A DNA stretch of 43,313 nt, from contig NC_068987.1 in the NCBI RefSeq assembly GCF_001194135.2, forward strand, positions 38,785,487-38,828,799, read 5' to 3'. Each line of letters opens with the position of its first letter. Position 1 is the stretch's first letter. A model generated the notes under the pieces. The model made no database searches. It had not been told where the DNA came from and saw nothing but the letters and a program-made list of their open reading frames with translations. The translations under genes and the position numbers were made by a program. This document shows, in pieces, positions 3,154 through 42,749 of this stretch. Source of the stretch: Octopus bimaculoides (lineage: Eukaryota).

Positions 3154-3327
3154 CTCCTCGACTACCACCAAGGTTTTTCAGTGCAACTCTGGCTTTGCGG
3201 ATGTCAGCATCAAGCTCTGGATAGCCAGCGGCTTCACATTCCATTATTGCTTTATTCAATGTATCGACATCTTTCTTCCTAATCGCCATATTCAGCTGAT
3301 CATGTAGTTCGTTCGGAGACTTAACAT
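3154..3327 (-). CDS. Repeat exon E30 (type A), 174 nt; only exon with a consensus GTAAG donor
   Basis: AAAG|AT..GGAG|GTAAG; [57 protein letters not shown]. Confidence 0.92.
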
Positions 3328-3370
3328 CTTTAAATTTGAAATTATATATATTCATGTACATACAAAGAAA

Positions 3371-3408
<38 letters not shown>

Positions 3409-6400
3409 GTATTATACATATATATAAGTTAATCAGAGATAAAAGCAGGTATATTTTTTATAGTCCATCAGGATTAAAATGAGAGATAGGAAAAGACGGA
3501 AAAATTGGAAAGATTTACATCTGTGTTTGAACGACTGGTTGCAGTTGATAGCGAATACAAAACATTATAAGTGTACAAACGTAGACAGAATGTTGCAAGG
3601 GAGAGAAAATAGGTAATAGGCGGGAAGGGAAAGAGAAAAGACAAGAGGATGAGAAGCTGATTAGGGTGAGGTGGTTAGAAAAAATATGGTGAGGTGGACA
3701 CTGAAGAATAAAAATGGAATTCCTGAATTAAGTGGAAGTGATCGAGTAGAAAGGAAAACATTCATATAAACCGTTGGTGGCATGATTAGAAATTTGATTA
3801 TGAAAAGTTACTCCTTGATTTCTTGAGTGTGGAGACCAATGATGTTCAAAGAAGCCATAGACTAAGAGGTATTATGGAATGACCTATTGTATTGAAGTAG
3901 TTAGCTACAAGGTTCTCTGCCTTTAACCTTATTGCAACTACTCACCGGACCTCCAGCGTCTGCTGTCTTTTATCTCTCAACTGTTAACTTGAACCTGTAA
4001 AATGATTCTCTCTCCACTACCTCTACAGTTTTACTTTCCACTTATGTTACGTTATATACATACAACGGAGTGATACCATTCGAAAGCAAAAACGATGTAA
4101 AGTGCGTTGTGACCAGCGACGTATAACAGCATCCAATAGCCTGGTCGATCACGTGATCACATTACACTCACACACACACAATTATATATCATCATCATCA
4201 TCATCATGTATCGTGCGCCTGCAGCGCATTGATGACACGACAAGTTCTCTAGCTGCCTTGCCACTCTTGTCCAACAACTACTGTTCTTTACTTGCCTCTT
4301 GATCTATTACCCTCTACTCTTCCTTCCATGATAATGCTTTCCAGACCTCTGCTTCTTCAAATATGGCCATAATAGATGAGCCTCTGGTTTTTCCACAATG
4401 TTCAGGAGTTGTCTTTTCCCTACTTCATTTATCTAATGATCCTTGTAAGAGACTTGTAACATTCTCCTACACACCCACAAACGCATTGATTATATTTTCT
4501 TCAGATTTATTCAGAGTCCATGCTTCCCAACATAAATGCCAGTTGGTGGAAAAACTAAACTCAGATTATCAAAGGGTGGATTAGAGTTCATGTGCACAAG
4601 ATCAAAATACAAAGTTCTAATGTTTTACACCACACATTATGGTATGTGCGTATGTGTGAATGCGCGTACAATGTTGATATTTGTATACTGTATTATAGTT
4701 TACGCTGGTTAATGTGTACATGTGCGTGTGTGTTTGTGGGCATGCGTGTGCATGTGTACATAAGCGTGTTTGTGGGTGCGTTTGGAGTAAATAATAGGAA
4801 GACACAAAAATTTATAGTGGTAAAAAAGTTATAAGAAATGTCAACAATATTCATTCCGTTTTGTTTCCTATTACTGTCTTAACATATGATGCTATAAAAC
4901 AATTTGAAGTATATCATTTCAATTTTGTATTCACGTAGGAAAGTTATTTGCAGACATGCGAAACATGCGATTGGGAATTTGCAAACCGACAGATGTCTAA
5001 GGAAATTTATTCATGCACTTAGGTTGAGAAATAGTCATTCTAACCTCCAGTACCACCTCCAAGGATGTTTGACAATCTTCTGGCTTTTTGTAAATCATTT
5101 TCTAGCTCTGGCAAACCTGCTGCAGTACATTCATTAATAATTCGATCTAGATTTCGTTTATCTTTTTCATTCATGGCATCTTTTAATTTTCGTTTTATTA
5201 TGTCTGGAGACAGTGATCCTAAGAATAGAAAGTACATACAAAACTGAAGAAAATAGCTCTAAATAGTCTATTGATTCAGATTGGATAAACAGAAGTGACA
5301 TCACGATTGGATGAAGTGCATGAAAAATCTACATTATCAACATCTTAACTTCTCTTTTTAGGATAACAAATATTAAAAGCAAATTGTTTTTATCGACAAA
5401 TTTGATTTCACAATCCATGCATATGTTATATCAAATATATTTTTATCAACAACACATGCACATATCTTTTCAATGTAGAATATAAAAGAATTTCGTGAAA
5501 ATTACTTTCGCTATGTTGCCGAAAAAATGAGACAGAAATATATCTAACCTCCTCGACCACCTCCAATCTGTTGCAATGTATTTCTAGCTCTGCAAAGGTC
5601 TGGCCCAAGTTCAGGGTATCCGGTAGTCTCGCAAACATCAATAATATTTTCCAAAGCTCGCTTATCTTTTTGTCTTGTCGCTTTCTTGAGTTCTTCACGT
5701 AATGCGTCAGGAGTGGGAAGACTTGGTCCTAACAACCATAATAAATGTCTGTTTAGATATTTGTTTACATTTGCATAATCATTTCACACATATAAAGACT
5801 TATATGTACGAACGTGTGTGTACATATATACATGCATATAAACACGCGCACGCACGCACGCACACACACACACATACACACACATACACGCGCGCGCGCG
5901 CAAATATTATACAAATAGATTACACTAATGACAGCTTGTGGCAGTAATATTCCATAGCGATACTTTAGAAAGCGAATCAATTCTTTCGGAACTGAAAGTC
6001 ATAGATGTAATGAGATTAACGTAAAGTGGTGCCCAAGCCAATATCATTAGCCAAAGCATCTTTTTCTATTAAATTTAACTGAATCAACTTTCTTTAGTTT
6101 TTAAGTGAATCTCTAATTCAGACAAATCCATTTGATATATTCTTGAATTTATGTCTTTATTTTTAATTGAGCAGGAAATTTCATAACAATTTTCGTATTT
6201 AATCCGTAACTACTTAATTGACAAGGATATTGATAAGTAATTTTTGCAATCACAGTTTTAAACATCAAATAAATTATTATTGCACTGTGCGCTTTCAGTT
6301 TTACTCCAGTGGTTAGACATATAAATCAGACATCTAAATGTGAAATAAAAATTTTGTATCTTCACCAACATTATAGATCAGCAATAATTTGTTGATCAGA

Positions 6401-7078: not shown

Positions 7079-7170
<92 letters not shown>

Positions 7171-13100: not shown

Positions 13101-16100
13101 TATGCATGTATGTATGCATATATGTATATATGCATGAATACACGCGAACCGAATATCCATTACCAAGATGAAAAGTCGCTTGAAATGGCCCAGAACCTCA
13201 TCTTTCATGTAAGAAAACAAATAACTTTCCATTACGTGTATAGTAGTCTGGTGTTTGACTTGGTGTATAGTAGCTTTGTGTTTGGCGTTGCAAACGTGTG
13301 CTCAAGAATTGAGCATTTTAAACTTAATTTTGATATACAGCTGTTTCATGTGTATTAAATAAGAACAAGGTATTAAGTAAAAGAGAAAATAGATTATTTC
13401 ATTTGATGCTATTACACAGTAGCTGGAGTAAATTACTCATGGAAATATCATTCTTAAAACGCCTAGAAACCGAGTACTCTAAGACAACCACACGTCTATA
13501 TATTAGAACTGGCCTGAGATAACACATCTAGCGCTAGGAAGATGTGCACTGATAGTTTTATTGCGAGCTCTGACACTAACCAAGTAGAGTTGCGATGTAT
13601 CTCAGCTTATATGATATCAAATGTGTATCCAACATATAAGTCTCCAAGACAGCTTCATGCTAACATATCTTCTTAACACATGCACCTTTTGATTTTATTA
13701 TTAAGAGAATAAATATACATACCTGCTTACAAAGTTCTACACGCATGAATAAATCGTGAACAATAACATAACCATAAATTTAATCAAGAAAAAATGTCTC
13801 CATAACACTGCTCCATCACAACCTACTCTACAACCTAATAATCAATACTATGCAGCTACACCCAACATAGCTGAGAAACAGAGACTATATAAAGCCAAAA
13901 TTAATTTAAATGCATCACAGTCCGATGATGGCTTAGCTGGACGAAACTTCGAAGTCACTGTTAATGTTATTCTTGTTAAAGAGTAATGAAAGCAGTGTTT
14001 AATAAGAGAAAATAGTGTTTTCTAAGAAGCCAAACGAAAAGATAGTCCAACAAAAAGATAGCTCAACTAAAATTATACAAACAAGAAGAAGATGATGATG
14101 ATGAAGACGACGACCAGGTGAAACATATTACGTCTATTGGCTCAGTAAAACAGTACTTTTTCTACTCTATGCACAAGGCCCGACATTTTTGGTGGGGAGG
14201 AGGCCAGTCGATTAGATCGACCCCAGTATGTAACTGATACTTAATTTATCGACACCGAAAGAATGAAAGGCAAACTCGACTTCGGCAGAATTTGAATTCC
14301 GAACGTAAAGACAGACGAAATACCGTTAATTATTTCGCCCGGCGTTCTAACGCTTCTTATTTCTTTATTGCCCTCAAGGGGCTAAACATAGAGGGGAAAA
14401 CAAGGACAGAAAAATGGATTAAGTTGATTACATCGACCCCAGTGCGTAACTGGTAGTTAATTTATCGACCACGAAAGGATGAAACGCAAAGTCGGCCTCG
14501 CCGGAATTTCGCCCGGCGTGCTAACTTTTCTGCCAGCTCGCCGCCTTCTCACTAAAACAGAACAAGTCAATCACTGGCTTGATAAATTAGTTCTTTCTCC
14601 TTAGATATGTTGTCATATACTTATGTTAGCAATCATAATTATCCTCAAAGACTACGTTTTCCAGAACATATATTAATCCTTTCTGAGTCTGAATTGCTAC
14701 TACTCCTACATGCGAGAAATGAAATTTTTTTATTTCCCAAATTCTCAGTAAGCACAAACTGGTATTTAAAAATGATATTTAAATGATATTTAATTAGAAA
14801 TTGTAATGCTGCCTTTATTTGTTACATGTAAGTAAATAATGTAATATTCTTAATTTCAATTAATCCCATAGTGTACATGAATCGTGTGAAACAGCAAATA
14901 TGCTAACCTCTTGATATATCACGTATTTTTTCTAACTTTTCTCTTGCTTTATGTATATCGGAATCCAGTTCTGGCATACCGTGAGCGACGCATTCAACAA
15001 TCACATTTTCTATGGTAGACTTGTCTCCTTTACTGAGGGTGTCTTTCAATTTTTCGCGCAGAATTTCAGGAGATTTCATTCCTAGAATATTTTAGATACA
15101 AATTCTAGTTTTCCAGTTTTCTTTCATTTTTATATCGGTGTTTACAAAATCCACACATACATGCACATATTTGACGGAAGTGACAGCATAAGAAAATCAG
15201 CCTATTAGATATTTCGAAGAGTTGTAGGCATTAAAAGTTTATCATTACATACAAAAAAACTATTTTTCGGAAATTCCTAGTATAAGCATATTGGTAACAA
15301 CTTCATTGTTTTAACAATAGTCATCAAAATATTTGCGCGTCTATTATTTAGTGGATATACAACCACCCAATCTACTAACATTACTAGATTCTATAGAAGG
15401 CATGCAATTTAGCAGAGTTCTGACCTCGTCCACCACCGATGCTTTCTAAAACATCTCTAGCTTGACGTAAAGTACTCGATAATTCAGGATATCCGCTAAT
15501 TTCGCTTTCAGTTATGGCCTGTAATAAACTGCCCATATCTTTTTGCTCCATCGCAGTTTCAAGTTCATAGCGTAATGATTCGGGAGACTTAACATCTAGT
15601 AATGAAAACAGAATTCATAATATTAACATTCTAATTTTAATAAAAAATAGTAAGAGTAGTATGTATTTCAGTAATAAATATGTTTGGTTGTTAATATGAG
15701 GGTGAGCTACAAAGTTCAGAGACTAGCTATGAAGGAGTGATGCTAGAGTTGTGAAATCTTGCATGCATTAATTTTAATTCATTTTATTAATAACTGCATT
15801 GTTTATTTCCAGGTAAACTGACATCTGACTGCTCAAAGAAGCGACTTCTTTTGGAAGTCGACGAAATCTAGCATCATAGTGCTATCAAATACGTGCAGAA
15901 GTGTTTAGCCTCCCAAAGACTTCCATGCTCACTTAGTTGCTATATTAGGGGATAATGTTCCAGCTTTAGCAGAGTTATTAATGGTGCAAAATAGGTATCT
16001 GAATTTAGGAGAGGAACGGAGAGTCTTGAAATGACCCAGTTCTGGACTTCCTGCGACTGCAACCACTGAGGAAAACATTGATCGTGTTCATCACATAGTG

Positions 16101-19100: not shown

Positions 19101-20005
19101 AAGGATTGCTAGCTAACCTTCATAGCTTTCACCTAATTCTTCCAATAATTCTCGAGCTTTCTGAATTTCATGATCTAATTCGGGAAACCCTGCTGCAACA
19201 CACTCATTGATTCGTTTCTCTATTTTCTTTCTGTCTTTACGCCAAACAGCCTTCTTAAGTTTATCAAGAAGAGCTTCTGGTGTCTTGGATCCTATTAGCA
19301 TTACCAAAATAATAAAAGAAAAGACCCGTTTTAAATTATGTTTCCAAACTATTCCATATCATTCCCCACATATATGTTTCCACGTATTTACTCAATATTT
19401 AATAACAAATTAACTATATGGAGACACACAGATAGATTTAGTACGACAAAATTAGAAACTCGATAAGTCAAATATAATGACCCATAGGCAAATAGAGAGT
19501 TTAATAAAATATATACAAAGGAAGCCAACCTCCACGGCTTCCTGTCATTATTTCCAGCATATCACGAGCATCACTCAGTGGAAGACTTAATTCAGGATAG
19601 AGTACATTTTCACAGTCTTGGATAACTTTCTCTAGTTTATCTTTGTCATTCTCTTCCATAGCCGTTTCTAACTGACTGCGCAAAGTTTGAGACGGAATAG
19701 TCTCTACAGCCAAAAAGAAATACCAAACTTGAATGAATTTATTTTTTATACAAAATTTGCACTCAAATATTTTAGTTATATTGTAGTCATTAAACTGATG
19801 GACATAGAGTTATATTAAATATATTCATATTCAGAACCTGTGTGTCTGAGTATCATAATAACAACCGTTTGCTGTTTGCTCTTATTTATAACATGTAAAA
19901 TAATCCTCTATTTCTACAAACATCGACGTCTCATTCTTTTGTTGTTATACATATTATTATTATTATTATTAGTATTGTTGTTGTTGTTGTTATTATTATA
20001 TATGC

Positions 20006-20605: not shown

Positions 20606-21067
20606 GAGGGAAAGGGGGGAAATGTACATATATATTTGTGCGTGTGTACATGTATTTATGTAATTTTAAAATACTTTATCAATTAATTAAATTTAAGATA
20701 TTTTTATAATTCTTAAAATATTAGTTTCTGAAAGTAATTTTAAGCATTTGTAATTTTATGCATATGCCATGTTTAAAATATTTCCATCCAGAATAGAATG
20801 CATTCAACACAGTAATTATATTAATAACTCTATACAAATCTAACCTCCGGAACCAAACTCAAGAACATCCAAAATATTTCTGGCTTGTTGTATATCTGCA
20901 TCCAGTTGAGGAAATCCTGAGGCAACACATTCGTTTATAATTTTTTCCAAAGCATCTTTATCTCTCATTTCCATGGCTTTTATGAGTCTGTTAAGTAGGG
21001 TTCTCGGTGTCTTTGTTCCTAATAACCACAGAATTAAAGCAAAAAAATCATATGTGCGTGTTTGTGA

Positions 21068-31147: not shown

Positions 31148-34100
31148 NNNNNNNNNNNNNNNNNNNNNNNNNNNNNNNNNNNNNNNNNNNNNNNNNNNNN
31201 NNNNNNNNNNNNNNNNNNNNNNNNNNNNNNNNNNNNNNNNNNNNNNNNNNNNNNNNNNNNNNNNNNNNNNNNNNNNNNNNNNNNNNNNNNNNNNNNNNNN
31301 NNNNNNNNNNNNNNNNNNNNNNNNNNNNNNNNNNNNNNNNNNNNNNNNNNNNNNNNNNNNNNNNNNNNNNNNNNNNNNNNNNNNNNNNNNNNNNNNNNNN
31401 NNNNNNNNNNNNNNNNNNNNNNNNNNNNNNNNNNNNNNNNNNNNNNNNNNNNNNNNNNNNNNNNNNNNNNNNNNNNNNNNNNNNNNNNNNNNNNNNNNNN
31501 NNNNNNNNNNNNNNNNNNNNNNNNNNNNNNNNNNNNNNNNNNNNNNNNNNNNNNNNNNNNNNNNNNNNNNNNNNNNNNNNNNNNNNNNNNNNNNNNNNNN
31601 NNNNNNNNNNNNNNNNNNNNNNNNNNNNNNNNNNNNNNNNNNNNNNNNNNNNNNNNNNNNNNNNNNNNNNNNNNNNNNNNNNNNNNNNNNNNNNNNNNNN
31701 NNNNNNNNNNNNNNNNNNNNNNNNNNNNNNNNNNNNNNNNNNNNNNNNNNNNNNNNNNNNNNNNNNNNNNNNNNNNNNNNNNNNNNNNNNNNNNNNNNNN
31801 NNNNNNNNNNNNNNNNNNNACCCCCCCCTCCTTGTCCCCCCCTCCTCTCTCTCTCTCTTTCTCTCTGGTATTTTGATTAAGATTTGTTATGAAATTTATT
31901 GCAAAGTCTAACCTTCACGACCACCAGTAACAGACCGTAACGTGTATTTTGTTTTTTGCAGGTCGAAGCTTAGTTCCGGGTATCCGGCAGCTTCACATTC
32001 CTTAATCACTATTTCTAAAGCTTCTTTGTCTTGTTTTTGACGTGCTTGCTTCATTTCTTCTCGCAATATATGAGGGCTTTTGAAACCTGTTAAAAATGTT
32101 CAGAGAATTGGAATATTGTGAAATATATCATATAGTATTCTTTTATTTTTCGTCAGATAAACTTTCGAAATATTAATCACAGTAGAGAAGTGTCGTATTT
32201 CGTATCAAATAGAAATATTAAATTTTAAGAAGAAACTTCATATTTTCGCTTTAAACTATAGATATTTCAAAATTATGTAGTATTGCCTATTTGTAGTTTC
32301 TTATACCAGTTCGACTGAGAGATAATTATTATAAAAGATCAAGCTAAAATTGTTAACATTAGTTTTAGAAAAAAGAAGAATAATGTTATTTAAACTATCA
32401 ACTCTACATCTTACCTTTAAGGAAAATTGAAATTGAAATATTGAAATTGAAAAATAATTTTATTTCCATAATAATTTGCATAGGAAATATTTTTTATATG
32501 AAATAATATTTTTTAATGCTTAATTCACATATTTGATAATAATTTTCATATTAATACTTCATTGACAAAAAATTATAATTCTAACCTCCTGCACCACCTT
32601 GTAATATGATGAGAAAGTCTCGGGCTTCTTGTATATCTGAATCAAGTTCTGGTATACCAGCTGACACGCAGTCATTAATTGTTTTTTCTAACTTTACGAC
32701 ATCTTTCTCTTTAATTGCATTTCTTAGTTTTTCCAAAAGGTTCTCTGTAGTCTTAGCATCTAATAACCAAATTAAAATAATTTATAAAGTGTTTTAGTTT
32801 ACTGATTGCACTAATTATTTAAAATCTCATATGTTCTTTATAAAATGTCCGAACGTTTTTCAAATTCCAATATTTAGTTATATAAATAGGACTACATTTT
32901 GATAGAATTATCATCCTTATAAAATCATTCGCCCACTTTTTTATGACGTTTCAATTTTAATTGAACATGATGAGAATTGACTTTCTTACACATTATAATG
33001 TCATTTACGTACTTCGTGATGTCATTTAAAGATTCTTTTTGTAATTTAATTAACATTCTATAATTTGAATTTAACTGATAAAGATGCTGGTTATTAAAGA
33101 CATGTAGATAGACATGAAACCGCTAACCTTCACTATGTCCACCTAAACTTTGCAGAACACGCCTGGCTTTACGAAGAGTAAAAGAAATCTCAGGAAACTT
33201 GGCCTTTTCACTCTTATTAATAGCTTTTACCAATTCTTGAACGTCTTTCTGTCTAGAAGCGTCTTTCAGCCAGGCACGTAGTGCGTCAGGAGATTTAGAA
33301 TCTGATAGTCACAAAATGATTATTTAATAAAGAAATGTTGTTTAGAAATATCTCACACTCATACGCGTGCGCACATACACACATTTTGTATTTTTGTGTA
33401 TCAAATACATACATATGAGGGGAAGTCAAAAGTTACCCGCACTTTCACCATAACATCTTTAATATGATCACACTGCCTTCTGTGCATGCGTGCTTATAGT
33501 TGGTAGTATTGTGATCGTGTGATCGAAGTTTGAGCCTCATCGCGCCATTTGTCTTTCTGGCTTTACAGTGGCCGCTTCACTAGCAATGCTCACCAAAAAA
33601 AGAACGAAGAGCAGTGATCCGATTTCTCTGGTGGGAAGGTGTGTCAGGTGTTGAAATTCATCGGAGGCTTTTAGCACAATACGGGGACAGTACACTACCG
33701 CGTAGAAGTGTGTATGAGTGGATCGAGAAGTTTAAAAATGGCCGGACAAGCGTGACGAACGAAGAGGGAGCAGGACACCTATCANNNNNNNNNNNNNNNN
33801 NNNNNNNNNNNNNNNNNNNNNNNNNNNNNNNNNNNNNNNNNNNNNNNNNNNNNNNNNNNNNNNNNNNNNNNNNNNNNNNNNNNNNNNNNNNNNNNNNNNN
33901 NNNNNNNNNNNNNNNNNCAAGCTCGAGAGACTGTAATAGTGAACCGGTTCACCATTACCATCTCCCGAGTCACTGTTCTTTGTCCTTCATTGGCGCACAA
34001 TACTAGTGGAGCAGGGATGCTTACACTGTAAAACCAGAAAGAAAAATGGCGTGATCAGGCTCAAACTCTGATCACGTGACCACAATACCACCAACTCTAA

Positions 34101-34180
34101 GCACGCATGCGCAGAAGGAAGTGTGACAGTAACAAAACTATGCTATGGCGAAAGTGCGGATAATTTTTGACTTCTCGTAT

Positions 34181-34239
<59 letters not shown>

Positions 34240-36725
34240 CATATAAACAATGGGCACTTGTGATACGTATTTACTGTGTAGAAACAACATGTCGCTGCAA
34301 AATGCTGTGACAGCATTTCGAAATTGACTATTTCGTAAGCTTTGCAGATTTGACTGGGAGAGTATACTGTCAAGCTTTTTCCGAGATTATACAATGTGAA
34401 GACGTATGTACACTTACAACCCAAACATTTACAAACCCACCTCCTACATAAACATACATACATACATGTATGTATGCATGTATGTATATATGCATGTACG
34501 TATAGGATTTTCGGACTAAAGTTGGAAAAGAAAACAGAGTCACCCATCCAAAAGTTTTTAAAGTATTTTATGAATTTAAAAGTATGAACTAATCATGGCT
34601 GGGAGATAGCAGTTTATTCAAATTAGCCGCTTTTAGCTTTCACCACGGCCTCATGGTGGCTATTAAACCTGGTGTATGCATTCCTTACTATACCCCTGTG
34701 AAGACCTTCGAACATCTCCATGATCTTCGCAAGCAGTTATCCTTGGTGTTGCAGACAGAGTAATTGGTGTCTTTCTCAACACACAGTAATCCATGGGATT
34801 ACAATCAGAGGAATTTATGAAGTAAAAATTGGGGCTAGTAAAGTCGTAGAAATTCTTCGACAACTACTTCTGACTTTTCCGGAGGTATGGCAAGGAGCCG
34901 AATGGGATATATGGTACATATACGTATGTGCTATATATAGAGAGAGAGAGGAGTGAGGGAGGGGAGAGGGGAGGAGAGAAGGGGGAGAAGGGGAGGAGAG
35001 AAGGGNNNNNNNNNNNNNNNNNNNNNNNNNNNNNNNNNNNNNNNNNNNNNNNNNNNNNNNNNNNNNNNNNNNNNNNNNNNNNNNNNNNNNNNNNNNNNNN
35101 NNNNNNNNNNNNNNNNNNNNNNNNNNNNNNNNNNNNNNNNNNNNNNNNNNNNNNNNNNNNNNNNNNNNNNNNNNNNAGAAATAGGAAGAGATATAGACAG
35201 AAAATGAAATAATATTAATCCATATAAAACAATACTAAATTATTACAATAATAGCTTTGCAAATAAATGTCTCAATTTGCATTCGGAATGCAATATTTTT
35301 TTATCTTCAAAGAGAGCACTCGCAATATATTCCCAACCTTTTGTGGTATTGTCCAGGTTACCCAAAATTTGTTGAGCATTTTCAATTTCTGAGTCTAATT
35401 CTGGTAATCCTGCTGCAATTGCCTCGTTTATAATTCTTTCCAAACTTAGTCTGTCTTTTCGTCTAATAGCTCGCTTCATCTTATCCGCAATGACTTCTGC
35501 ATTTTTTACTCCTTCAAGATGTAAAGCGAAGTTACACATTCAAACATTGCTTCGTATTAAAGATCGTCATGCACCGATATATACATTTAAATGACAATCA
35601 TGACTCAAAATTTGATATTTCAATTGCATCTTTCAAAATATGACAAAATCAAAAATCTGTTTATATAATTTACACATTTTACTGAAAACTTCTAGAAAAT
35701 AATGTATTAAGAAATCTGGTAGAAAATTAAATGCTTTGAATTAATAATTTATTTTATTTCTGAAAATAAACGTCATCACGCTGCTAACCTCCTCGTCCAC
35801 CGCCCAAACTCGTCAAAGTATCTCTAGCTTTTCGAAGTTCCAACCCTAGTTCTGGATAGACAGCTTCCTCACAATCAATAATAACAGCTTCTAATTTGCC
35901 TTGGTCTTTTTCGTCGATGGCCATTTTTAACCGACTTCTCAATGCATCGGGAGTCATGTAGGCTAATAAATTGAGAAACCACATAAAATTATTTTGAAGG
36001 ACCTAGATATCACAATTTATAAACCATTTAGTTTAAAGTAATTCATAAGTTACTTTTTTCTATTATTATACATCGCACAGAATATTACATACATTGTATG
36101 AATATACTTAGAAATAAAATATTTATGAAATGTCTAATTGAATGATAAAGTTTCAAAACAAATAAAAGGGCAAATAAAAGTGCTAACCTCTACGACCACC
36201 ACCTAACTTTTTCAAGATGTCCCTAGCTCGGCTTATATCAGAATCCAATTCAGGAAATCCAGAGGCAACACATTCATTAATAATTCTTTCCAGAGTCGGC
36301 CTGTTTTTCTGTAACATTGCAGACTGCAATTTTTCACGCAAACCTTCTGGGGTTTTATGTCCTGAGAATATGTTTGAAATTATAATAAAATGAAATTCCA
36401 CAAAATAGAAATTATTCGTGCTTGTGTTCAATATAAGTGTTTATCGGTCCCTTGTTCAAGGTATAATTGTTTTGAACGTGATTATTCTTTTATTCTCTAA
36501 TTTAATAATTTGATTGCAGCCATGCTGGAACACCGCCTTGAAAGGTTTTAGTCGAACAAATCGACCTTGGGACTTATTTTTTAAGCCTAATACTTATTCC
36601 ATGGACCTTTTTCGTCGAAGCACTAAGTTACAAGGACGTAAACACACCAGCACCGGTTGTTAAGCGGTGATGGATGACAAACAAAGACACAATATATATA
36701 CGTATATATATATATATATATATAT

Positions 36726-36780
<55 letters not shown>

Positions 36781-36881
36781 TATATACATACATATACATG
36801 TATGTATGTGTNNNNNNNNNNTAGATAGATAGATAGATAGATATATAGATATATATATATACATACATATACATGTATGTA

Positions 36882-36922
<41 letters not shown>

Positions 36923-39900
36923 GACGGGCTCCTTTCTGTTTCCATCTACTGAATCCACTCTCAAGGCTTTGGTCGGCCTGACACTTGCTCAAGGTGCCAC
37001 ACAGTGGGACTCAGCCTGGAACCATGTGGTTAAGAAGCAAGCTTCTTACCACACAGCCACGCCTGCGCCTAAATGAGGAAATTTTAATACTATTTAACAA
37101 ATTCTCAACACGACCACGCAGAAATATATGCACGTAGATGTTCATATGTACGTCACATTTATACAAATCTTATTTATATACGGTTTGCACTGAAGAGCAT
37201 TCTCACACTTTACTCTCAGTTGATCAAACGTTATTTGGAAATATAGTTATCTACGCGGTGTTGTTAAAGAGTATGAGGTTCCGTTAGACAACAACCTGTT
37301 CGGAAAATGACCTGTAGACAAATTGTGTTGTAAACATATCTTCAGTTTGATTAAATAACTGTGAAATGGCTTTTTAAAAAGCAGTCTTGCTTTGCAGAAG
37401 CAACGTAAATATTAAGGTTGTTTTGCTTCAAAACTTAGAAGCAAAGAAATAATTCACGGAATCTTTTTACTATTTCATATTATGGTTTAAGTAAGTATTT
37501 ATTGATACAAAATTTTATTATTTCTGTTTGCTTAATTTTCCTAAACATTCCTCAAGTTCTTACTGCAAACCACCCCAAACGTATTTTTACAGATTCGCAA
37601 GTTTCTGAACAGATGTAGTTTTTCATGCCAGTTACGAAAATCACAATTTCTGAAGAAATAAATAATAAAAATGTTACGAAACTTTAAAGCCAAACTTTTT
37701 TGTAATTTTAGCCAGTCAGATCTAACCTTTCTCTTCACACTGTGGAGATATTACTGATAGTGCCATGCTTTTTCTTTTCCGTTTCTTTTTTCTTTTTGCA
37801 AAAATTGACAATTACATTAAATCATATTCTGGCTTACAATGCGTTTCTTACACATGCTTTTTAATTGAACTGAATTAAGCTTTGTAAGTGCTTGACTAAA
37901 AGAGGATTAGAAGCCTAAGAAGATGACAGCTTAAAATAGACCTGATAAAACATTGCGTAGAATTTGAATTTAAGAAGTGTTTTCAACGTCTTTCAATGAT
38001 GGCAGGCGAATCAGACGTACAGTAGTTCGTTGTAGGATATAAATAACATTACCACTTGCTTATCAGGAAACTTGTAAGTTCGATCAAACACACAAACAAA
38101 CTAAGATGAGTGACTACAATACCCTGCCTCCGCGTACGCGCGCAAAGTATTTGACGAAAATGTTTGAAGCATTTGACGAAAGAAAATTAAAACAGACTTT
38201 TTGCAATGAAATTTTGCGATACTAACCCTAAATCCTAACTCTGAACAGTAACCCAAAATCCTATCCCAAGCCCTAATCCTAATCTCAAAACGGTTGTGAT
38301 TTTGGTAGCTAGAATGAAAAACTACATATGTGTACAAATTTTAAATAAAATTGTAAGCGGAAGTTTAAACCGAAAACCTTTCCTAACGATTTAATTAATA
38401 CGCAATTAACGATTCAATTAATGCGCTATTAAAAATAATAGATGTGATTTGCAGAAACTAATTGCTAACCTCCGAGGCCACCTCCTATGCTTTGCAAAGT
38501 TGTTCGAGCCCTACGAAGGTCGCTACCCAGTTCAGGGTAACCAGCACCTTCGCATTCATCAATGGCTTTCTCCAAATGTAATCTATCTTTCCAGTTGACT
38601 GCTTGTTTGAGTTTATCACGTAAAGCTTTCGGTGACATTTTACCTGAGGCAATCATAAATAAATCATAAAATAAATTACAAAATTACCTGAGGCAATCAT
38701 AAAATAAATAAACATTGGAGAGCGGGAAACAGTAATAATGTATAATTAAAGCAAATATTAAATTAACTGTGTTATTCACTAGTGGAGATTGTAACACACG
38801 CAATTCAACACATTACAAAAACATTGTGAAAACAATCTAATATTATATGTGCAGATGACACATAAAAATTGTTTCTTTGATACATAACCAGACATTTCTA
38901 ATTAGCTCCTACCTTTTAATACTAAATTTACATGTCTTCAATGTGTAATGTACAGCGAAACAAAATTTATGTCAAACTAATAAATCTGGAATTGTTAAAT
39001 GAAATTATTTTAATCCAATTAAAATATCTGATCCTTCGCTTTTATTGATAGTATTTGTTAGAATTTTCACATTATTTTGTTTGGGGGCATCAATTCTCTG
39101 TTTGCATAATAGTTGTTGTTTAGTTTTTAGAACCAAAACGTATTTAAGATTTTAATTCTTTCAAATATGTACAAAAAGAAAATTAATTACGGCATTAAGT
39201 AGAAAAAATTTACCAATTATGATTCAATGCAAATCGACTCTTTTAGAAATGTCAAAATATTCGAGTGAACCTAACCTCCAACTCCTCCTTCAAGTAGATC
39301 AAGTACATCTCTAGCTTCGTGTACTTCTGTTTCCAGTTCTGGAAAACCCGATGCTACACATTCATTTATAACGCTTTCCAAATGAGGTCTATCTTTCCAT
39401 CTTACTGCCATCTTCAGTTTGCCACGTAAACTGTCAGGATTTTTTAGTCCTAACAAACCAAAAATATATTGACAATAAAAACACCTTTACTTTCCGTGAG
39501 CATTGTCATGTCAAAATGCTACATACTGGCTCGAATGTTTCCCTTATTCAAGGTACAATCAGGTTTATTTAATAAATACATTCACACAGTCCGATACGCA
39601 AGCACAATTTTATTTATATTAAAAATATACTCTGCATAAAAGTATACATCAATATACCTGTTCATGAAGACACTACCATCACATACACACACACTTACAA
39701 CACACACACACACATACAGCACGCAACACAAACACACATACAGCACGCAACACAAACACACATACAGCACGCAACACAAACACACATACACACACAAACA
39801 CACAAAACACATACATGTACACGCAACACTCATACATGTGAATATAATGTATTTTAATATTTCGCTCAGGTTTAGCGAGACTAATAATCTGGTGAACTCA

Positions 39901-41395: not shown

Positions 41396-41428
<33 letters not shown>

Positions 41429-42749
41429 CTGTATGTCTACACACCCAAAATTCTTTAATTGATTCTCTGTTTTGTTCGAGTTTTAAAACGTCAAGCGACA
41501 CGCATGATTACACTCTGAAGTCAAAACACAAAAACGTCTAAGAACTGGGCTAACCACTACTTATCCCAATAGTTTGTTTCTTTTCTTATCTCTTAAACAA
41601 TCTCGATGACCTAACAAACATTTCGTTCTTTCCCCCTTAATCCAACAATTTTGGTGATTGACATATATACATACTTAAGCCACACACACATGTGTGACTA
41701 TATAGATAAACACATGCGCTAATACTCCTATCTTTGCTTTGTGTGTATGTGATTGTCCGAGTACATTTGTGTACAGGCGTATGTGTACGGGCGTATACAT
41801 GCATTTTTGTACATGTCTGTGTGCGTGCGCGCGTGAGTGTGTGCGTCTGTGTGAATACAAGTATATATCTATATCTATATATATATATATATGTATATGA
41901 TCGAGTGTGCGCGTCTACCCCTATATCTCCCAATATGTGCATGCTTTTTAATACTTTGGGATAGAACTTTCCAAAATTATAAACATAAACTTTCTCACTT
42001 ATAACGCCTGCATGTACTGAAAATGTAACTTTCCCAAATAAAGTACACTCCATATTCAAGGCTCTGATGAAGCTATAGGATGTTATCCTGGAACTCAACT
42101 AAGAGTCTCCTACATCATAGAGCAGAAGCAGTTGTAAGCTAATGAAGTTCATTACATAACATTTGTTTTTTCCGGTGTCATCTCTTTAATTTCTGTGTAA
42201 TTACATTATATTCATATTTCAGTAATTATGCTATTAAATTCTTGTCATATTTTCACGTCGACCCCTCACATAAATATTCATACATGCATTTCACTGATCC
42301 TCAGAACGTAAATTCAGTGGGAATCACTGACAACCACCTTGATATCAGTGTCAAAACCGTCCTGTGGTATTACAATGATGTTTTTATAAACAGATACCAT
42401 GCACCACACAATTCCTTGCGTATGCATATACTTACATATACACACACGCACGCGTAGATATTAATACCGGCATACACGCAAAAATACAGAATAGTGCATG
42501 TATGTTCACAGAATGTGCATACGTTTGCATATCGTTTTTCTTTACATTTCAATGAAAAAATCATAGCAGTCTAACCTCCACGACCTCCACCTAAACTCTC
42601 CAGTGCATTTCGAGCTTCGCTCAAATCTGAACTGATCTCAGGATATCCAGCTTCTTCACATTCAGATATAGAACGTTCTAAACTTGATCTGTCCTTCTGC
42701 CGCATTGCTGCATTTAACTCGTCTCGTAATTTTTCGGGTGACTTATGAT
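3154..42749 (-). CDS. Partial multi-exon gene: tandem array of 30 homologous phase-1 exons encoding ~58-aa helical repeats (1740 codons when spliced); tentatively the C-terminal repeat region of a hillarin/KY-like protein
   Basis: Seen: 30 exons with AG acceptors and AG|GT donors, all lengths divisible by 3, no internal stops, shared motif KD-x3-LE-x2-I-x-EC-x3-G[YF]PEL-x3-[LI]-x2-AR-x2-L. No initiator exon or clear terminal exon in the window. The family link is recollection only and needs BLASTP. Confidence 0.9.
5045..5218 (-). CDS. Repeat exon E29 (type B), 174 nt
   Basis: TTAG|GA..GGAG|GTTAG; [57 protein letters not shown]. Confidence 0.92.
5549..5728 (-). CDS. Repeat exon E28 (type A), 180 nt
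   Basis: TTAG|GA..GGAG|GTTAG; [59 protein letters not shown]. Confidence 0.9.
7060..7188. repeat. (GT)n microsatellite
   Basis: Direct reading. Confidence 0.95.
7857..8080 (+). mobile_element. SINE, family 1 (ggcggcgagctggcagaaacgttagc... head)
   Basis: Same head at 22561 (+) and inverted at 12166 and 14546; B-box-like gagttcaaattcc. Confidence 0.75.
8085..8424 (-). mobile_element. SINE, family 2 (taggcgcaggagtggctgtgtggtaag... head), diverged
   Basis: Reverse-complement similarity to 9975-10382, with an internal (CA)n tract. Confidence 0.65.
9840..9959 (+). rRNA. 5S: 5S rRNA gene copy, probably a pseudogene (altered 5' helix arm, no oligo-T terminator)
   Basis: tacggccatatcacgttgagagcaccggttctcgtccgatcaccgaagttaagcaacgtcg...tacttagatgggtgaccgcttgggaaacctaggtgctgttagc matches the metazoan 5S pattern, including the internal control region, over ~120 nt. 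Confidence 0.9.
9975..10382 (+). mobile_element. SINE, family 2, near full length
   Basis: taggcgcaggagtagctgt head, ggttccaggttcagtccc B-box-like motif, central TA/TG microsatellite, cagtcaaatgactgaaacaagtaa tail. Confidence 0.8.
11950..12166 (-). mobile_element. SINE, family 1
   Basis: ctaacgattctgccagctcgccgcct is the reverse complement of the family-1 head. Confidence 0.7.
14150..14546 (-). mobile_element. Two adjacent or nested family-1 SINE copies
   Basis: atcgaccccagt...ttaatttatcgac...gaaaggatgaa block occurs twice; head ctgccagctcgccgcct at 14530-14546. Confidence 0.7.
14908..15081 (-). CDS. Repeat exon E27 (type B), 174 nt; absent from ORF track
   Basis: CTAG|GA..AGAG|GTTAG; [57 protein letters not shown]. 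Confidence 0.9.
15425..15595 (-). CDS. Repeat exon E26 (type A), 171 nt; absent from ORF track
   Basis: CTAG|AT..CGAG|GTCAG; [56 protein letters not shown]. Confidence 0.88.
15695..16880 (+). mobile_element. Mariner DNA transposon, full length, decayed transposase
   Basis: Imperfect TIRs ta-tgagggtgagctacaaagttca / tgaactttacaactgaccctcg-ta. Motifs [39 protein letters not shown] and [14 protein letters not shown] lie in different frames. Confidence 0.85.
17120..17305 (-). CDS. Repeat exon E25 (type B), 186 nt with acidic linker
   Basis: TTAG|GA..GAAG|GTTAG; [61 protein letters not shown]. Confidence 0.9.
17625..17798 (-). CDS. Repeat exon E24 (type A), 174 nt
   Basis: GTAG|CT..GGAG|GTTAG; [57 protein letters not shown]. 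Confidence 0.92.
18169..18342 (-). CDS. Repeat exon E23 (type B), 174 nt; absent from ORF track
   Basis: GCAG|GG..GGAG|GTTCG; [57 protein letters not shown]. Confidence 0.9.
18716..18889 (-). CDS. Repeat exon E22 (type A), 174 nt
   Basis: TTAG|GA..GGAG|GTTAC; [57 protein letters not shown]. Confidence 0.9.
19118..19291 (-). CDS. Repeat exon E21 (type B), 174 nt
   Basis: ATAG|GA..GAAG|GTTAG; [57 protein letters not shown]. Confidence 0.92.
19530..19703 (-). CDS. Repeat exon E20 (type A), 174 nt
   Basis: GTAG|AG..GGAG|GTTGG; [57 protein letters not shown]. Confidence 0.9.
19995..20600. repeat. Compound (TA)n/(TATAC) low-complexity tract spanning an N gap
   Basis: Direct reading. Confidence 0.9.
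20845..21018 (-). CDS. Repeat exon E19 (type B), 174 nt; absent from ORF track
   Basis: TTAG|GA..GGAG|GTTAG; [57 protein letters not shown]. Confidence 0.92.
21070..21162. repeat. (GT)n microsatellite
   Basis: Direct reading. Confidence 0.95.
21492..21665 (-). CDS. Repeat exon E18 (type A), 174 nt
   Basis: GTAG|GA..GGAG|GTCAG; [57 protein letters not shown]. Confidence 0.9.
22151..22324 (-). CDS. Repeat exon E17 (type B), 174 nt; absent from ORF track
   Basis: CCAG|GG..AGAG|GTTAG; [57 protein letters not shown]. Confidence 0.92.
22561..22791 (+). mobile_element. SINE, family 1, with target-site duplication
   Basis: Flanked by the direct repeat agaaacattta (22550-22560 and 22792-22802). 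Confidence 0.8.
23092..23265 (-). CDS. Repeat exon E16 (type A), 174 nt; absent from ORF track
   Basis: TCAG|CT..GGAG|GTTAG; [57 protein letters not shown]. Confidence 0.92.
23480..24450 (-). mobile_element. Decayed RTE-like LINE fragment
   Basis: Minus-strand remnants such as [22 protein letters not shown] and [12 protein letters not shown], interrupted by stops and frameshifts; boundaries approximate. Confidence 0.55.
24977..25150 (-). CDS. Repeat exon E15 (type B), 174 nt; not shown on this strand in ORF track
   Basis: ATAG|GA..GGAG|GTTAG; [57 protein letters not shown]. Confidence 0.9.
25478..25636 (-). CDS. Repeat exon E14 (type A), 159 nt via a shifted acceptor; absent from ORF track
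   Basis: CGTTAG|AA..GGAG|GTTAG; [52 protein letters not shown]. No AG at the 174-nt position, so the 5' boundary is less certain. Confidence 0.82.
26301..26655 (+). mobile_element. SINE, family 2, diverged
   Basis: aaccacatggtt..caatcctactgtacggcacctagggcaagt head and tccatgactgaaacaaa tail. Confidence 0.6.
26843..27016 (-). CDS. Repeat exon E13 (type B), 174 nt
   Basis: TTAG|GC..GCAG|GTTAG; [57 protein letters not shown]. Confidence 0.9.
27225..27343. repeat. (CATA)n microsatellite
   Basis: Direct reading. Confidence 0.9.
28110..28283 (-). CDS. Repeat exon E12 (type A), 174 nt
   Basis: ACAG|AT..GGAG|GTTAG; [57 protein letters not shown]. Confidence 0.92.
28623..28796 (-). CDS. Repeat exon E11 (type B), 174 nt; not shown on this strand in ORF track
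   Basis: TTAG|GG..GGAG|GTTCG; [57 protein letters not shown]. Confidence 0.88.
29293..29466 (-). CDS. Repeat exon E10 (type A), 174 nt
   Basis: TTAG|TC..GGAG|GTTAA; [57 protein letters not shown]. Confidence 0.92.
30171..30572 (+). mobile_element. Penelope-like element fragment (GIY-YIG endonuclease C-terminus)
   Basis: [65 protein letters not shown] follows the Penelope endonuclease pattern. Confidence 0.8.
31913..32086 (-). CDS. Repeat exon E9 (type A), 174 nt; absent from ORF track
   Basis: ACAG|GT..GAAG|GTTAG; [57 protein letters not shown]. Confidence 0.92.
32586..32759 (-). CDS. Repeat exon E8 (type B), 174 nt; absent from ORF track
   Basis: TTAG|AT..GGAG|GTTAG; [57 protein letters not shown]. 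Confidence 0.92.
33128..33301 (-). CDS. Repeat exon E7 (type A), 174 nt; absent from ORF track
   Basis: TCAG|AT..GAAG|GTTAG; [57 protein letters not shown]. Confidence 0.88.
33414..34179. mobile_element. Mariner-derived foldback element with two 5' ends in inverted orientation
   Basis: ta-tgaggggaagtcaaaagttacccgcacttt / aaagtgcggataatttttgacttctcg-ta TIRs, >200 bp of inverted subterminal similarity, and an N-terminal HTH remnant [33 protein letters not shown]; centre is an N gap. Confidence 0.75.
34560..34900 (-). mobile_element. Tc1/mariner transposase 3' fragment
   Basis: [12 protein letters not shown] resembles the (W)PPNSPDLNPLDY motif; downstream gaggccgtggtggaaagc (EAVV) resembles the Tc1-like C-terminus; boundaries approximate. 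Confidence 0.6.
35338..35511 (-). CDS. Repeat exon E6 (type B), 174 nt
   Basis: GAAG|GA..AAAG|GTTGG; [57 protein letters not shown]. Confidence 0.88.
35789..35962 (-). CDS. Repeat exon E5 (type A), 174 nt
   Basis: TTAG|CC..GGAG|GTTAG; [57 protein letters not shown]. Confidence 0.92.
36188..36361 (-). CDS. Repeat exon E4 (type B), 174 nt
   Basis: TCAG|GA..AGAG|GTTAG; [57 protein letters not shown]. Confidence 0.92.
36510..37071 (-). mobile_element. SINE, family 2, with expanded internal (GATA)n/(TA)n microsatellite
   Basis: accacacagccacgcctgcgccta is the reverse complement of the family-2 head. Confidence 0.75.
38470..38643 (-). CDS. Repeat exon E3 (type A), 174 nt
   Basis: TCAG|GT..GGAG|GTTAG; [57 protein letters not shown]. 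Confidence 0.92.
39276..39449 (-). CDS. Repeat exon E2 (type B), 174 nt
   Basis: TTAG|GA..GGAG|GTTAG; [57 protein letters not shown]. Confidence 0.92.
39711..39790. repeat. 24-bp minisatellite (acacatacagcacgcaacacaaac) x3
   Basis: Three direct copies; explains the YSTQHKHT repeat in the spurious ORF. Confidence 0.8.
40050..41348 (+). mobile_element. Mariner DNA transposon, near full length, decayed transposase
   Basis: Motifs [65 protein letters not shown]; ends aaaagtaaccggaa / ttccggtttc..cccctcgta. Confidence 0.85.
42576..42749 (-). CDS. Repeat exon E1 (type A), 174 nt
   Basis: ACAG|AT..GGAG|GTTAG; [57 protein letters not shown]. Confidence 0.92.

What the first reader, a model, noticed from the sequence alone, without database searches (positions are those of the whole stretch)
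3154..42749. Hidden array of 30 symmetric one-module exons encoding a ~1740-aa beads-on-a-string repeat
Seen: 30 minus-strand exons, 26 of exactly 174 nt, all phase 1 at both ends and all open, while their introns (225-9179 nt) show no evident similarity to each other. About a third do not appear as such in the ORF track. Each encodes amphipathic helices around a G[YF]PEL turn and usually ends in a Gly-rich linker. Divergent but uninterrupted exons imply an old expansion kept by purifying selection (inference). From memory the module resembles the short C-terminal repeat of hillarin/KY-family proteins, present there in low copy; expansion to at least 30 exon copies would be unusual and may be lineage-specific.
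Basis: partly seen in the sequence, partly recalled or inferred. Interest (0 to 1): 0.92.

Follow-up and report, generated by a model that had tools for sequence, protein, structure and literature searches.

The report
Giant octopus KY-like repeat-exon array
The 30 look-alike exons are real, conserved coding exons forming about a third of a roughly 90-module helical "beads-on-a-string" region in a giant octopus relative of the cytoskeletal protein KY/hillarin; the gene is already annotated automatically but appears undescribed in the literature.

Summary
Observation confirmed. The minus strand carries 30 modules (43-86 bits each; best off-strand hit -3 bits). All have AG/GT splice sites, all are phase 1-1 and 26 are exactly 174 nt. 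The spliced product has no stop codon. All assembly gaps lie in introns. Modules alternate between two subtypes (A/B); the single break (E9-E10) falls on the intron holding the 672-N gap, so one exon is probably hidden there.

Identity: E28-E30 occur at 95-98% identity inside an Octopus vulgaris 2069-aa protein with Transglut_core and Ig-like_KY domains. The same module occurs in 1-6 copies in abalone, chiton and annelid KY/LTD-1-like proteins, and in none in the bivalve, vertebrate, amphioxus and tunicate members. The hillarin/KY recall is therefore right.

Seven exons compared with a congener give dN/dS 0.24 and no indels. AlphaFold predicts each module as a three-helix unit with a flexible Gly-rich linker.

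It is not really hidden. O. bimaculoides and O. sinensis annotations carry 5242- and 6596-residue products of this gene, about 90 modules. A more distant genome has at least 44 modules.

Not shown: transcript inclusion of E1-E27, which the O. vulgaris model omits.

Verdict: real, conserved, large lineage-restricted expansion; new variant of a known family; moderate interest.

The parts
42576..42749 (-). E1, 174 nt, type A module exon
39276..39449 (-). E2, 174 nt, type B
38470..38643 (-). E3, 174 nt, type A
36188..36361 (-). E4, 174 nt, type B
35789..35962 (-). E5, 174 nt, type A
35338..35511 (-). E6, 174 nt, type B (divergent, no Gly linker)
   Evidence: orthologous ORF P0058 at 93% identity
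33128..33301 (-). E7, 174 nt, type A
32586..32759 (-). E8, 174 nt, type B
31913..32086 (-). E9, 174 nt, type A
31148..31819 (.). 672-N assembly gap in intron E9-E10; probable site of one missing type-B exon (inference from the only A-A break)
29293..29466 (-). E10, 174 nt, type A
   Evidence: orthologue in L006/L007, dN/dS 0.19
28623..28796 (-). E11, 174 nt, type B
   Evidence: orthologue in L006/L007, dN/dS 0.41
28110..28283 (-). E12, 174 nt, type A
   Evidence: orthologue in L006, dN/dS 0.29
26843..27016 (-). E13, 174 nt, type B (no Gly linker)
   Evidence: orthologue in L006, dN/dS 0.21
25478..25636 (-). E14, 159 nt, type A (AG acceptor 15 nt inside the usual position)
24977..25150 (-). E15, 174 nt, type B
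23092..23265 (-). E16, 174 nt, type A
22151..22324 (-). E17, 174 nt, type B
   Evidence: orthologous ORF P0019 at 95%
21492..21665 (-). E18, 174 nt, type A
   Evidence: P0066 at 96%
20845..21018 (-). E19, 174 nt, type B
19530..19703 (-). E20, 174 nt, type A
19118..19291 (-). E21, 174 nt, type B
18716..18889 (-). E22, 174 nt, type A
   Evidence: orthologue in L001, dN/dS 0.17
18169..18342 (-). E23, 174 nt, type B
   Evidence: orthologue in L001, dN/dS 0.35; 75% identical module in distant species L005
17625..17798 (-). E24, 174 nt, type A
   Evidence: orthologue in L001, dN/dS 0.17
17120..17305 (-). E25, 186 nt, type B (acidic tail instead of Gly linker)
   Evidence: P0033 at 84%
15425..15595 (-). 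E26, 171 nt, type A
14908..15081 (-). E27, 174 nt, type B
5549..5728 (-). E28, 180 nt, type A; present in O. vulgaris KY-like protein P0153
   Evidence: 98% identity
5045..5218 (-). E29, 174 nt, type B; present in P0153
3154..3327 (-). E30, 174 nt, type A; present in P0153; donor GTAAG

Best explanation
The window is an internal segment, towards the 3' end, of one giant octopus gene of the KY / hillarin / LTD-1 family (transglutaminase-like plus KY-type Ig-like domains). Downstream of that N-terminal region the gene carries a very long array, roughly 90 copies genome-wide. Each unit is a 174-nt phase-1/phase-1 exon that encodes one 58-residue module. Each module is predicted to fold alone as a small three-helix unit with the G-[YFML]-P-E-L motif at the helix 2 / helix 3 turn. 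It usually ends in a flexible Gly-rich linker whose last Gly codon is split by the intron. Modules come in two alternating subtypes (A: ECE.AGYPEL; B: INECVA(S/A)GFPELD), so the evolutionary and probably structural unit is an A-B pair. SHOWN: exon anatomy; homology to KY-like proteins; physical inclusion of E28-E30 in a KY-like protein model; purifying selection on seven of the exons; presence of the same array in at least four genomes. INFERRED: the exons are spliced in tandem into one polypeptide. The array acts as a long, flexible, length-defining spacer or tether between two ends. One end is a non-catalytic KY scaffold domain (catalytic Cys and His are absent). The other is a C-terminal domain that resembles the dynein microtubule-binding domain. 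That would make the protein a cytoskeletal linker. Because every exon is symmetric, skipping any subset keeps the frame, so isoforms of different length are possible.
For: Anatomy: (30 modules, 30/30 AG and GT, phase 1-1, 26 of 174 nt, no stops). Family: the module profile hits the octopus KY-like protein P0115 (E 5.9e-13) and the abalone KY/LTD-1-like proteins P0126 and P0143. P0153 (O. vulgaris CAI9725887.1, 2069 aa) passes Pfam thresholds for Ig-like_KY (216 bits) and Transglut_core (25.8 bits) and holds 16 modules, including E28-E30 at 95-98% identity. Giant gene: L003 lies wholly inside a gene with a 5242-aa product (O. bimaculoides). L004 lies inside a gene with a 6596-aa product that has an Ig-like_KY hit (O. 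sinensis). Both loci carry further 174-nt module exons. Selection: E10-E13 and E22-E24 against a congener give dS 0.177, dN 0.043 and omega 0.24. The exons have 0 gap columns against 252 in the introns, and exon identity is 93-94% against 85-88% for introns. Fisher p = 1.7e-9. Age: exon-exon DNA identity averages 52%, third-position identity is 38.5%, and introns are unrelated. A more distant genome has 44 modules in 50 kb sampled, 40 of them in strict A/B alternation. Its collinearity with the window is best at offset +9. Structure: one module has three helices at pLDDT 87. Four modules give pLDDT 84 and pTM 0.32, with linker pLDDT 52-63. Scaffold ends: the Cys and His columns of the transglutaminase-like core are not conserved in the octopus protein. 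The C-terminal domain profile hits only dynein heavy-chain MTBD/stalk regions in the PDB (30/30 hits, best E 9.3e-5).
Against: There are no transcript or junction data for E1-E27. The one full protein model I could read (P0153) jumps from its second module straight to E28 and omits all 27. I could not read the 5242-aa and 6596-aa products, so I cannot show that they contain the window's exons. None of the fetched annotated loci overlaps the window. No multi-module transcript-like contigs appeared among the profile hits; the two-module ORFs whose contigs I traced or read are genomic. The donor consensus G|GTTAG has a non-consensus +3 T, which is compatible with weak, regulated splice sites. The function is entirely inferred. 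The fold has no significant structural neighbour. The MTBD similarity is weak and was measured mainly on non-octopus members. The window's species was not identified.
Confidence: 0.75

Rival explanations
1. E1-E27 are cassette exons that are skipped in many or most transcripts. The array is a reservoir for length isoforms rather than a constitutively included block, and the 2069-aa O. vulgaris model is a genuine short isoform.
For: P0153 joins its second module directly to E28, and the frame is preserved because all exons are phase 1-1. The donors are uniform and non-consensus, with G|GTTAG in about 26 of 30. No multi-module transcript contigs were seen among the hits.
Against: Purifying selection (omega 0.24) and complete absence of indels in seven of the skipped exons show they are translated often enough to be maintained. 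The 5242-aa and 6596-aa products need about 90 modules to be included. This rival is compatible with the main explanation rather than exclusive of it.
Confidence: 0.3
2. The exons are used in a mutually exclusive way, like Dscam exon clusters, so that each transcript carries one or a few modules chosen from the array.
For: There are many similar, equally sized, same-phase exons in tandem separated by short introns.
Against: The strict A/B alternation over 30 to 40 modules in two species is what tandem inclusion of A-B pairs predicts, not one-of-N choice. Protein models contain 16 consecutive modules, and giant products exist. Each exon brings its own linker. Fused two-module exons exist in related genomes.
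Confidence: 0.03
3. The window's exons are decaying or unexpressed duplicates (pseudo-exons) left by segmental duplication.
For: They are absent from the O. vulgaris model, and one exon (E14) has lost its ancestral acceptor.
Against: 30 of 30 exons are open and 30 of 30 have AG and GT. Omega is 0.24 with no indels, while the introns accumulated 252 gap columns. Paralogues are about 52% identical in DNA with saturated third positions, yet the frame is intact. Random drift over that time would have broken most frames.
Confidence: 0.02
4. The array is a separate gene, not joined to the KY-like N-terminal region, as in the O. bimaculoides annotation, which splits an 806-aa partial KY-like model from a 5242-aa product.
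For: O. bimaculoides has separate models. The window itself contains no KY domain.
Against: O. vulgaris P0153 and the O. sinensis 6596-aa product (which has an Ig-like_KY hit) join them. The O. bimaculoides KY model is flagged partial in a gap-rich region, with 4408 N in L002. Non-cephalopod KY-like proteins carry the same module C-terminal to the KY region.
Confidence: 0.07

Closest known systems
KY (kyphoscoliosis peptidase) / hillarin / LTD-1 family: transglutaminase-like core plus KY-type Ig-like domains (Pfam PF01841, PF23265)
   Same: The octopus protein containing E28-E30 has both Pfam domains. The 58-residue helical module is homologous to the one found C-terminal to the KY region in abalone, chiton and annelid members. 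Members studied elsewhere are cytoskeleton-associated. Vertebrate KY associates with filamin C and the Z-disc (PMC6078408). D-hillarin interacts with the septin Pnut at the cleavage furrow, and LTD-1 shows an actin-like pattern (PMC3718969).
   Different: Copy number: 0-6 modules in all non-cephalopod members sampled. Against that, the O. vulgaris model has 16, this window alone has 30, and product lengths imply about 90. The catalytic Cys and His present in vertebrate and mite KY are absent. Leech hillarin and Drosophila Hil were not compared directly.
Giant modular cytoskeletal proteins built from one-domain symmetric exons (titin, nebulin, spectrin/plakin repeats) - analogy from general knowledge, not tested
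   Same: One exon encodes one structural unit. The phase is uniform so exon number can change without breaking the frame. There is a super-repeat (A-B pair), as in the nebulin and titin super-repeats. The predicted role is spacer or ruler.
   Different: There is no sequence or significant structural similarity. The module is a 58-residue three-helix unit with a Gly-rich linker, half the size of a spectrin repeat, and it is not predicted to form a continuous rod.
Dynein heavy-chain microtubule-binding domain (resemblance of the family's C-terminal domain; outside the window)
   Same: A profile of the C-terminal domain of six KY-like proteins, including the octopus one, hits only dynein MTBD/stalk regions in the PDB.
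   Different: The similarity is weak (best E 9.3e-5). There is no Pfam hit. The octopus copy is the most divergent row, at 23% identity to the first sequence of the alignment (the annelid protein P0168). No binding has been tested.
Helical 'L..A....D...L..AI..AE..G' repeats in protist proteins (for example the Rhodelphis marinus myosin P0010 and the Polykrikos protein P0120)
   Same: The module profile matches many tandem stretches: 19 in P0010, 7 in P0120 and 9 in P0009.
   Different: Per-module scores are low, 9-23 bits. The proteins have different architectures (a myosin head in P0010). Homology versus compositional or helical convergence is unresolved.

Membership tests
KY / hillarin / LTD-1 family | Transglutaminase-like core (PF01841) in the same protein | tested here: met
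   It is not in the window itself. P0153, which contains E28-E30, scores 25.8 bits against a cut-off of 23. The O. bimaculoides partial model also has it, as a weak hit.
KY / hillarin / LTD-1 family | KY-type Ig-like domains (PF23265) | tested here: met
   P0153 scores 215.9 bits over 3 stretches. The 6596-aa O. sinensis product that spans further module exons has the same hit.
KY / hillarin / LTD-1 family | The window's module is homologous to the helical repeat C-terminal to the KY region in other members | tested here: met
   The profile of the 30 modules gives P0115 E 5.9e-13, P0126 E 1.0e-11 (6 stretches) and P0143 E 4.5e-10. The chiton protein P0169 scores 27 bits.
KY / hillarin / LTD-1 family | The window's exons are physically part of a KY-domain transcript | tested here: inconclusive
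   E28-E30: yes, in P0153. E1-E27 are absent from P0153, and the giant products could not be read.
   Those sequences were not returned by any search. Only proteins named 'HIL-like', 'ltd-1-like' and 'kyphoscoliosis peptidase-like' by their sources were examined.
Active transglutaminase-like peptidases | Cys-His-Asp catalytic triad | tested here: not met
   In the alignment, vertebrate and mite KY keep GVC and H-x-WNAV. The octopus protein has other residues in the Cys and His columns, and Asp is retained. The assignment of catalytic columns rests on general knowledge of the fold.
Spectrin-type or other named three-helix repeat families | Significant sequence or structure match to a described family | tested here: not met
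   Pfam shows nothing above threshold. PDB sequence search finds nothing. Foldseek against the PDB finds no match at E <= 0.001.

The most novel reading that the evidence does not exclude
Cephalopods, or at least octopods, turned a small cytoskeletal adaptor of the KY/hillarin family into a protein of about 6600 residues. It would be a length-programmable tether. One end is a catalytically dead KY scaffold. The other end is a dynein-MTBD-like microtubule-binding head. About 90 independently folding three-helix beads separate them. Symmetric exons would let tissue-specific skipping set the tether length, with the 2069-aa model being a short isoform. That would be a new class of giant elastic or ruler protein, evolved independently of titin, nebulin and spectrin.
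Probability: 0.2. Interest if true: 0.8.

Novelty: new variant of a known kind. Interest (0 to 1): 0.55.

Why it matters
KY is a human myopathy gene whose molecular role is still unclear, and hillarin and LTD-1 are poorly understood cytoskeletal proteins. This finding is a lineage in which the family's short helical repeat has been amplified about 15- to 90-fold. It has been kept under purifying selection, with a strict two-module super-repeat and one-exon-one-bead architecture. That gives a natural experiment on what the repeat does: spacer, spring or binding platform. It also gives a clean example of exon-shuffling-type expansion that can be dated across cephalopods. The dynein-MTBD-like C-terminal domain, if confirmed, would give a testable hypothesis for the whole family, namely linking microtubules to filamin, septin or actin structures. 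For annotation, it shows that one current model (O. vulgaris, 2069 aa) omits at least 27 conserved coding exons. It also suggests that the O. bimaculoides gene is split in two.

Tried and rejected
(1) Pfam and PDB sequence searches with the spliced modules found no family and no relative. (2) The word-indexed protein search with E1-E4 and with the 30-module alignment returned only a few single-module ORFs and never the giant products, so it could not show whether annotated products contain E1-E27. (3) Exact look-ups of P0056 (the window's own ORF) and P0153 found nothing on record. (4) L002, L003 and L004 (annotated O. bimaculoides and O. sinensis segments of the gene) share only interspersed repeats with the window, so neither the window's species nor its position in an annotated assembly could be fixed. 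(5) I hoped the two-module proteins P0004-P0008 were transcript evidence. Those I could trace lie on genomic contigs, and the one I read has a fused two-module exon. (6) Foldseek against the PDB gave only generic three-helix matches with E > 2. (7) Hierarchical clustering of modules on raw identity failed to separate A from B; a diagnostic-column rule and subtype HMMs did. (8) My first automatic exon-boundary finder for the other loci picked GT dinucleotides inside Gly codons and underestimated sizes; it was replaced by an explicit 174-nt test. (9) Literature searches found nothing on this expansion or on an MTBD-like domain in the family. One octopus skin-mucus proteomics paper lists 'kyphoscoliosis peptidase' among detected proteins (PMC11431876), which shows only that some product of a KY-like gene is expressed.

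Full report
OBSERVATION. The window is AT-rich (about 66%), microsatellite-rich eukaryotic DNA with eight N runs. A profile built from the obvious minus-strand ORFs finds exactly 30 modules in six-frame translation. All are on the minus strand and score 43-86 bits; the only other hit scores -3 bits. Reading the flanks and enumerating in-phase AG/GT sites gives one exon per module. All 30 have an AG acceptor and a GT donor, and all are phase 1 at both ends: the last exon base G plus the first two bases of the next exon form a codon, usually Gly. Twenty-six exons are exactly 174 nt. The exceptions are E14 (159 nt, no AG at the 174-nt position, next in-phase AG 15 nt inside), E25 (186), E26 (171) and E28 (180). 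Introns are 225-9179 nt. The splice has no stop codon. It is 1745 codons with E14 taken at 174 nt, and five fewer with the AG-bounded 159-nt E14.

GAPS. All N runs lie in introns and none touches an exon, so no exon frame depends on continuity across a gap. Gaps can only hide whole exons. Modules fall into two subtypes: A (E-C-E-x-A-G-Y-P-E-L...D-L) and B (I-N-E-C-V-A-S/A-G-F/M-P-E-L-D...E-I). The order is ABABABABA|ABABABABABABABABABABA (subtype-HMM margins 24-50 bits). Only 15 of about 1.45e8 orderings of 16 A and 14 B have at most one same-type adjacency (my combinatorial count). The one break (E9-E10) is the intron with the 672-N gap at 31148-31819. I infer that one type-B exon is missing there. 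The other gapped introns keep the alternation, so they hide zero or an even number of exons.

AGE AND SELECTION. Introns share only nine HSPs, all interspersed repeats. Paralogous exons are 52% identical in DNA on average (38-62%). Identity at codon positions 1, 2 and 3 is 54%, 63% and 38.5%, so synonymous sites are near saturation while the protein pattern is kept. Mean pairwise protein identity is 40%. Three genomic contigs from sequencing runs of a congeneric octopus (L001, L006, L007) are orthologous to E22-E24 and E10-E13 with their introns. In those alignments exon identity is 93-94% with 0 gap columns. Intron identity is 85-88% with 252 gap columns. Nei-Gojobori gives dS 0.177, dN 0.043 and omega 0.24 (0.17-0.41 per exon); Fisher p = 1.7e-9. 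These seven exons are all among those missing from the O. vulgaris protein model, so they are conserved coding sequence regardless of that annotation.

IDENTITY. Pfam and PDB sequence searches found nothing. An exhaustive profile search found 238 proteins. Most are single-module ORFs called on cephalopod genomic contigs. The long hits include an octopus KY-like protein (P0115, one module at its C-terminus, E 5.9e-13) and abalone proteins that their sources name 'lim and transglutaminase domain protein ltd-1-like' or leave uncharacterized (P0143 with 2 modules, P0126 with 6). The P0115 cluster contains O. bimaculoides XP_052825369.1 ('kyphoscoliosis peptidase-like, partial', 806 aa). It also contains O. 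vulgaris CAI9725887.1 (P0153, 2069 aa). P0153 passes Pfam thresholds for Ig-like_KY (216 bits, 3 stretches) and Transglut_core and has 16 modules. Its modules 3-5 are the window's E28, E29 and E30 at 95-98% identity. Leech hillarin and Drosophila Hil themselves were not compared.

NOT HIDDEN, AND MUCH LARGER. The annotation tables returned with two neighbouring loci are decisive for the novelty claim. L003 (O. bimaculoides CM046607.1, 38.695-38.719 Mb) lies entirely inside a gene with a 5242-residue product. That locus is about 160-200 kb downstream of the KY-like partial model in L002. L004 (O. sinensis CM016865.1) lies entirely inside a gene with a 6596-residue product that has an Ig-like_KY hit. 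Subtracting about 880 N-terminal and about 255 C-terminal residues, as in P0153, leaves about 5460 residues, or roughly 90 modules. Both loci contain further module exons not present in the window. In the other loci, 42 of 46 modules admit a 174-nt, phase-1, AG...GT open exon: L003 7/7, L004 10/10, L005 15/19. A 151-kb contig from a more distant genome (ENA ERZ21867824) has 44 modules in the 50 kb I could sample, all on one strand, and 40 of them are in unbroken A/B alternation. Its modules are 50-75% identical to the window's. The best collinear register is L005 module 1 = E10, which suggests one-to-one exon orthology. So the array predates the split of these species, and the window holds about a third of it. 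I could not read the giant products; they are absent from both protein collections. I therefore cannot say whether they include E1-E27. P0153 does not include them: it passes from its second module directly to E28.

LINEAGE SPECIFICITY. Using the KY N-terminal region as query I collected 26 family members and counted modules with the 30-module HMM. Five bivalves, four teleosts, amphioxus, a tunicate and a mite have 0. An annelid has about 1 (marginal), a chiton has 2, and abalone has 2 and 6. Against that stand 16 in the O. vulgaris model, 30 in this window and about 90 implied by product length. The expansion is real and restricted, on present sampling, to the cephalopod/octopod lineage. Squid and Nautilus could not be examined, and the species of the ENA and Logan contigs is unknown.

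STRUCTURE AND LIKELY MECHANISM. AlphaFold2 with the 30-module alignment predicts three helices (4-17, 20-33, 36-53; pLDDT 87). The G-Y/F-P-E-L motif sits at the helix 2 / helix 3 turn, and the Gly-rich tail has low confidence. Four spliced modules give the same helices per module (pLDDT 85-91), linkers at 52-63 and pTM 0.32. That means confident beads with undefined mutual orientation. Foldseek finds no significant neighbour. In the KY domain the catalytic Cys and His columns kept by vertebrate and mite KY are substituted in the octopus protein, so a scaffold role is more likely than an enzymatic one. This is an inference: the identity of the catalytic columns rests on general knowledge of the fold. 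The domain that follows the array in family members, aligned with the octopus C-terminus, hits only dynein heavy-chain MTBD/stalk regions in the PDB (30/30 hits, best E 9.3e-5) and has no Pfam hit. My best-supported model is a giant cytoskeletal linker with a KY scaffold at one end and a possible microtubule-binding head at the other. A long flexible chain of three-helix beads, whose number sets the reach, would separate them. The symmetric exons allow in-frame isoforms of different length. The anatomy, homology and selection are shown. Tandem inclusion of E1-E27, the tether function and microtubule binding are inferred.

RIVALS. Pseudo-exons are excluded by omega 0.24, zero indels and 30/30 intact frames. 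Mutually exclusive (Dscam-like) use is contradicted by the A/B alternation, by models with 16 consecutive modules, by the giant products and by the fused two-module exons in related genomes. Cassette skipping of E1-E27 is compatible with everything seen and remains open. A separate array gene, as in the split O. bimaculoides annotation, is unlikely given the joined models in two other species and a gap-rich region in L002.

NOVELTY AND SCORE. I found no paper on this expansion. One octopus mucus proteomics study merely lists 'kyphoscoliosis peptidase' (PMC11431876). The gene exists in automated annotations, so this is not a discovery of an unknown locus. It is a striking, conserved and apparently undescribed variant of a known family. 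Practical annotation consequences follow: at least 27 conserved exons are missing from one model, one exon is probably lost in a gap, and one gene is split. Interest is 0.55.

Noticed in passing
window 31148-31819 (gap in intron E9-E10): The only break in the A/B alternation of 30 modules coincides with the 672-N gap. One type-B 174-nt exon is probably missing from the assembly here.
   Followed up: partly
window, donor sites of E1-E30 (for example 42575-42571, 39275-39271): The donor is an unusual, highly uniform G|GTTAG, with +3 T in 27 of 30, +4 A in 26 of 30 and +5 G in 28 of 30. With phase 1 this puts an in-frame TAG directly after the split Gly codon, so any retained intron terminates at once. 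GTTAG is also the commonest donor in the other species' loci (14 of 42). Whether this reflects selection or shared ancestry is unknown.
   Followed up: partly
window 25478-25651 (E14): E14 has no AG at the position that would give 174 nt. The next in-phase AG is 15 nt inside, giving a 159-nt exon that lacks the first five residues of the module.
   Followed up: partly
window 16253-16579 (+), 33614-33784 (+), 40527-41263 (+): There are mariner-type transposon remnants inside introns. Transposase_1 hits at E 6e-8 and Mos1 HTH_48 at E 2e-6. The third looks mariner-like by eye but has no Pfam hit.
   Followed up: yes
window 1484-2177 (+) and 30171-30569 (+): Further ORFs look like retroelement or transposon fragments by eye, but they had no Pfam hit at E <= 0.01.
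   Followed up: partly
outside the window: C-termini of P0168, P0126, P0143, P0169, P0178, P0153 (alignment A2): The domain that follows the module array in KY/LTD-1-like proteins resembles the dynein heavy-chain microtubule-binding domain. The PDB profile search gave 30 of 30 hits to dynein, best E 9.3e-5, and there was no Pfam hit. I found no mention of this in the literature searched.
   Followed up: partly
P0153 residues about 150-260 compared with vertebrate KY: The octopus KY domain lacks the catalytic Cys and His retained by vertebrate and mite KY. So do the bivalve, abalone, annelid, chiton, amphioxus and tunicate members in the alignment. These are likely pseudo-enzymes.
   Followed up: partly
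P0010 (Rhodelphis marinus, 3162 aa), P0120 (Polykrikos kofoidii), P0009, P0038, P0140, P0146: Protist proteins, one with a myosin motor head, carry many tandem stretches that match the module profile weakly (9-23 bits each, up to 19 stretches). The module may belong to an old, uncurated eukaryotic helical-repeat class, or this may be convergence.
   Followed up: partly
L008 1119-1460; ENA contig ctg115097l 66650-66988 and 62560-62904: In related genomes some adjacent modules lie about 6-10 nt apart in one ORF, as fused two-module exons. This indicates occasional intron loss within the array.
   Followed up: partly
P0153 (O. vulgaris CAI9725887.1) and O. bimaculoides XP_052825369.1 plus the 5242-aa product: There are annotation inconsistencies between species. 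The same gene is modelled as 2069 aa (O. vulgaris), as 806 aa partial plus 5242 aa (O. bimaculoides) and as 6596 aa (O. sinensis). Small nested models (LOC128248363, LOC118764272) overlap the array.
   Followed up: partly
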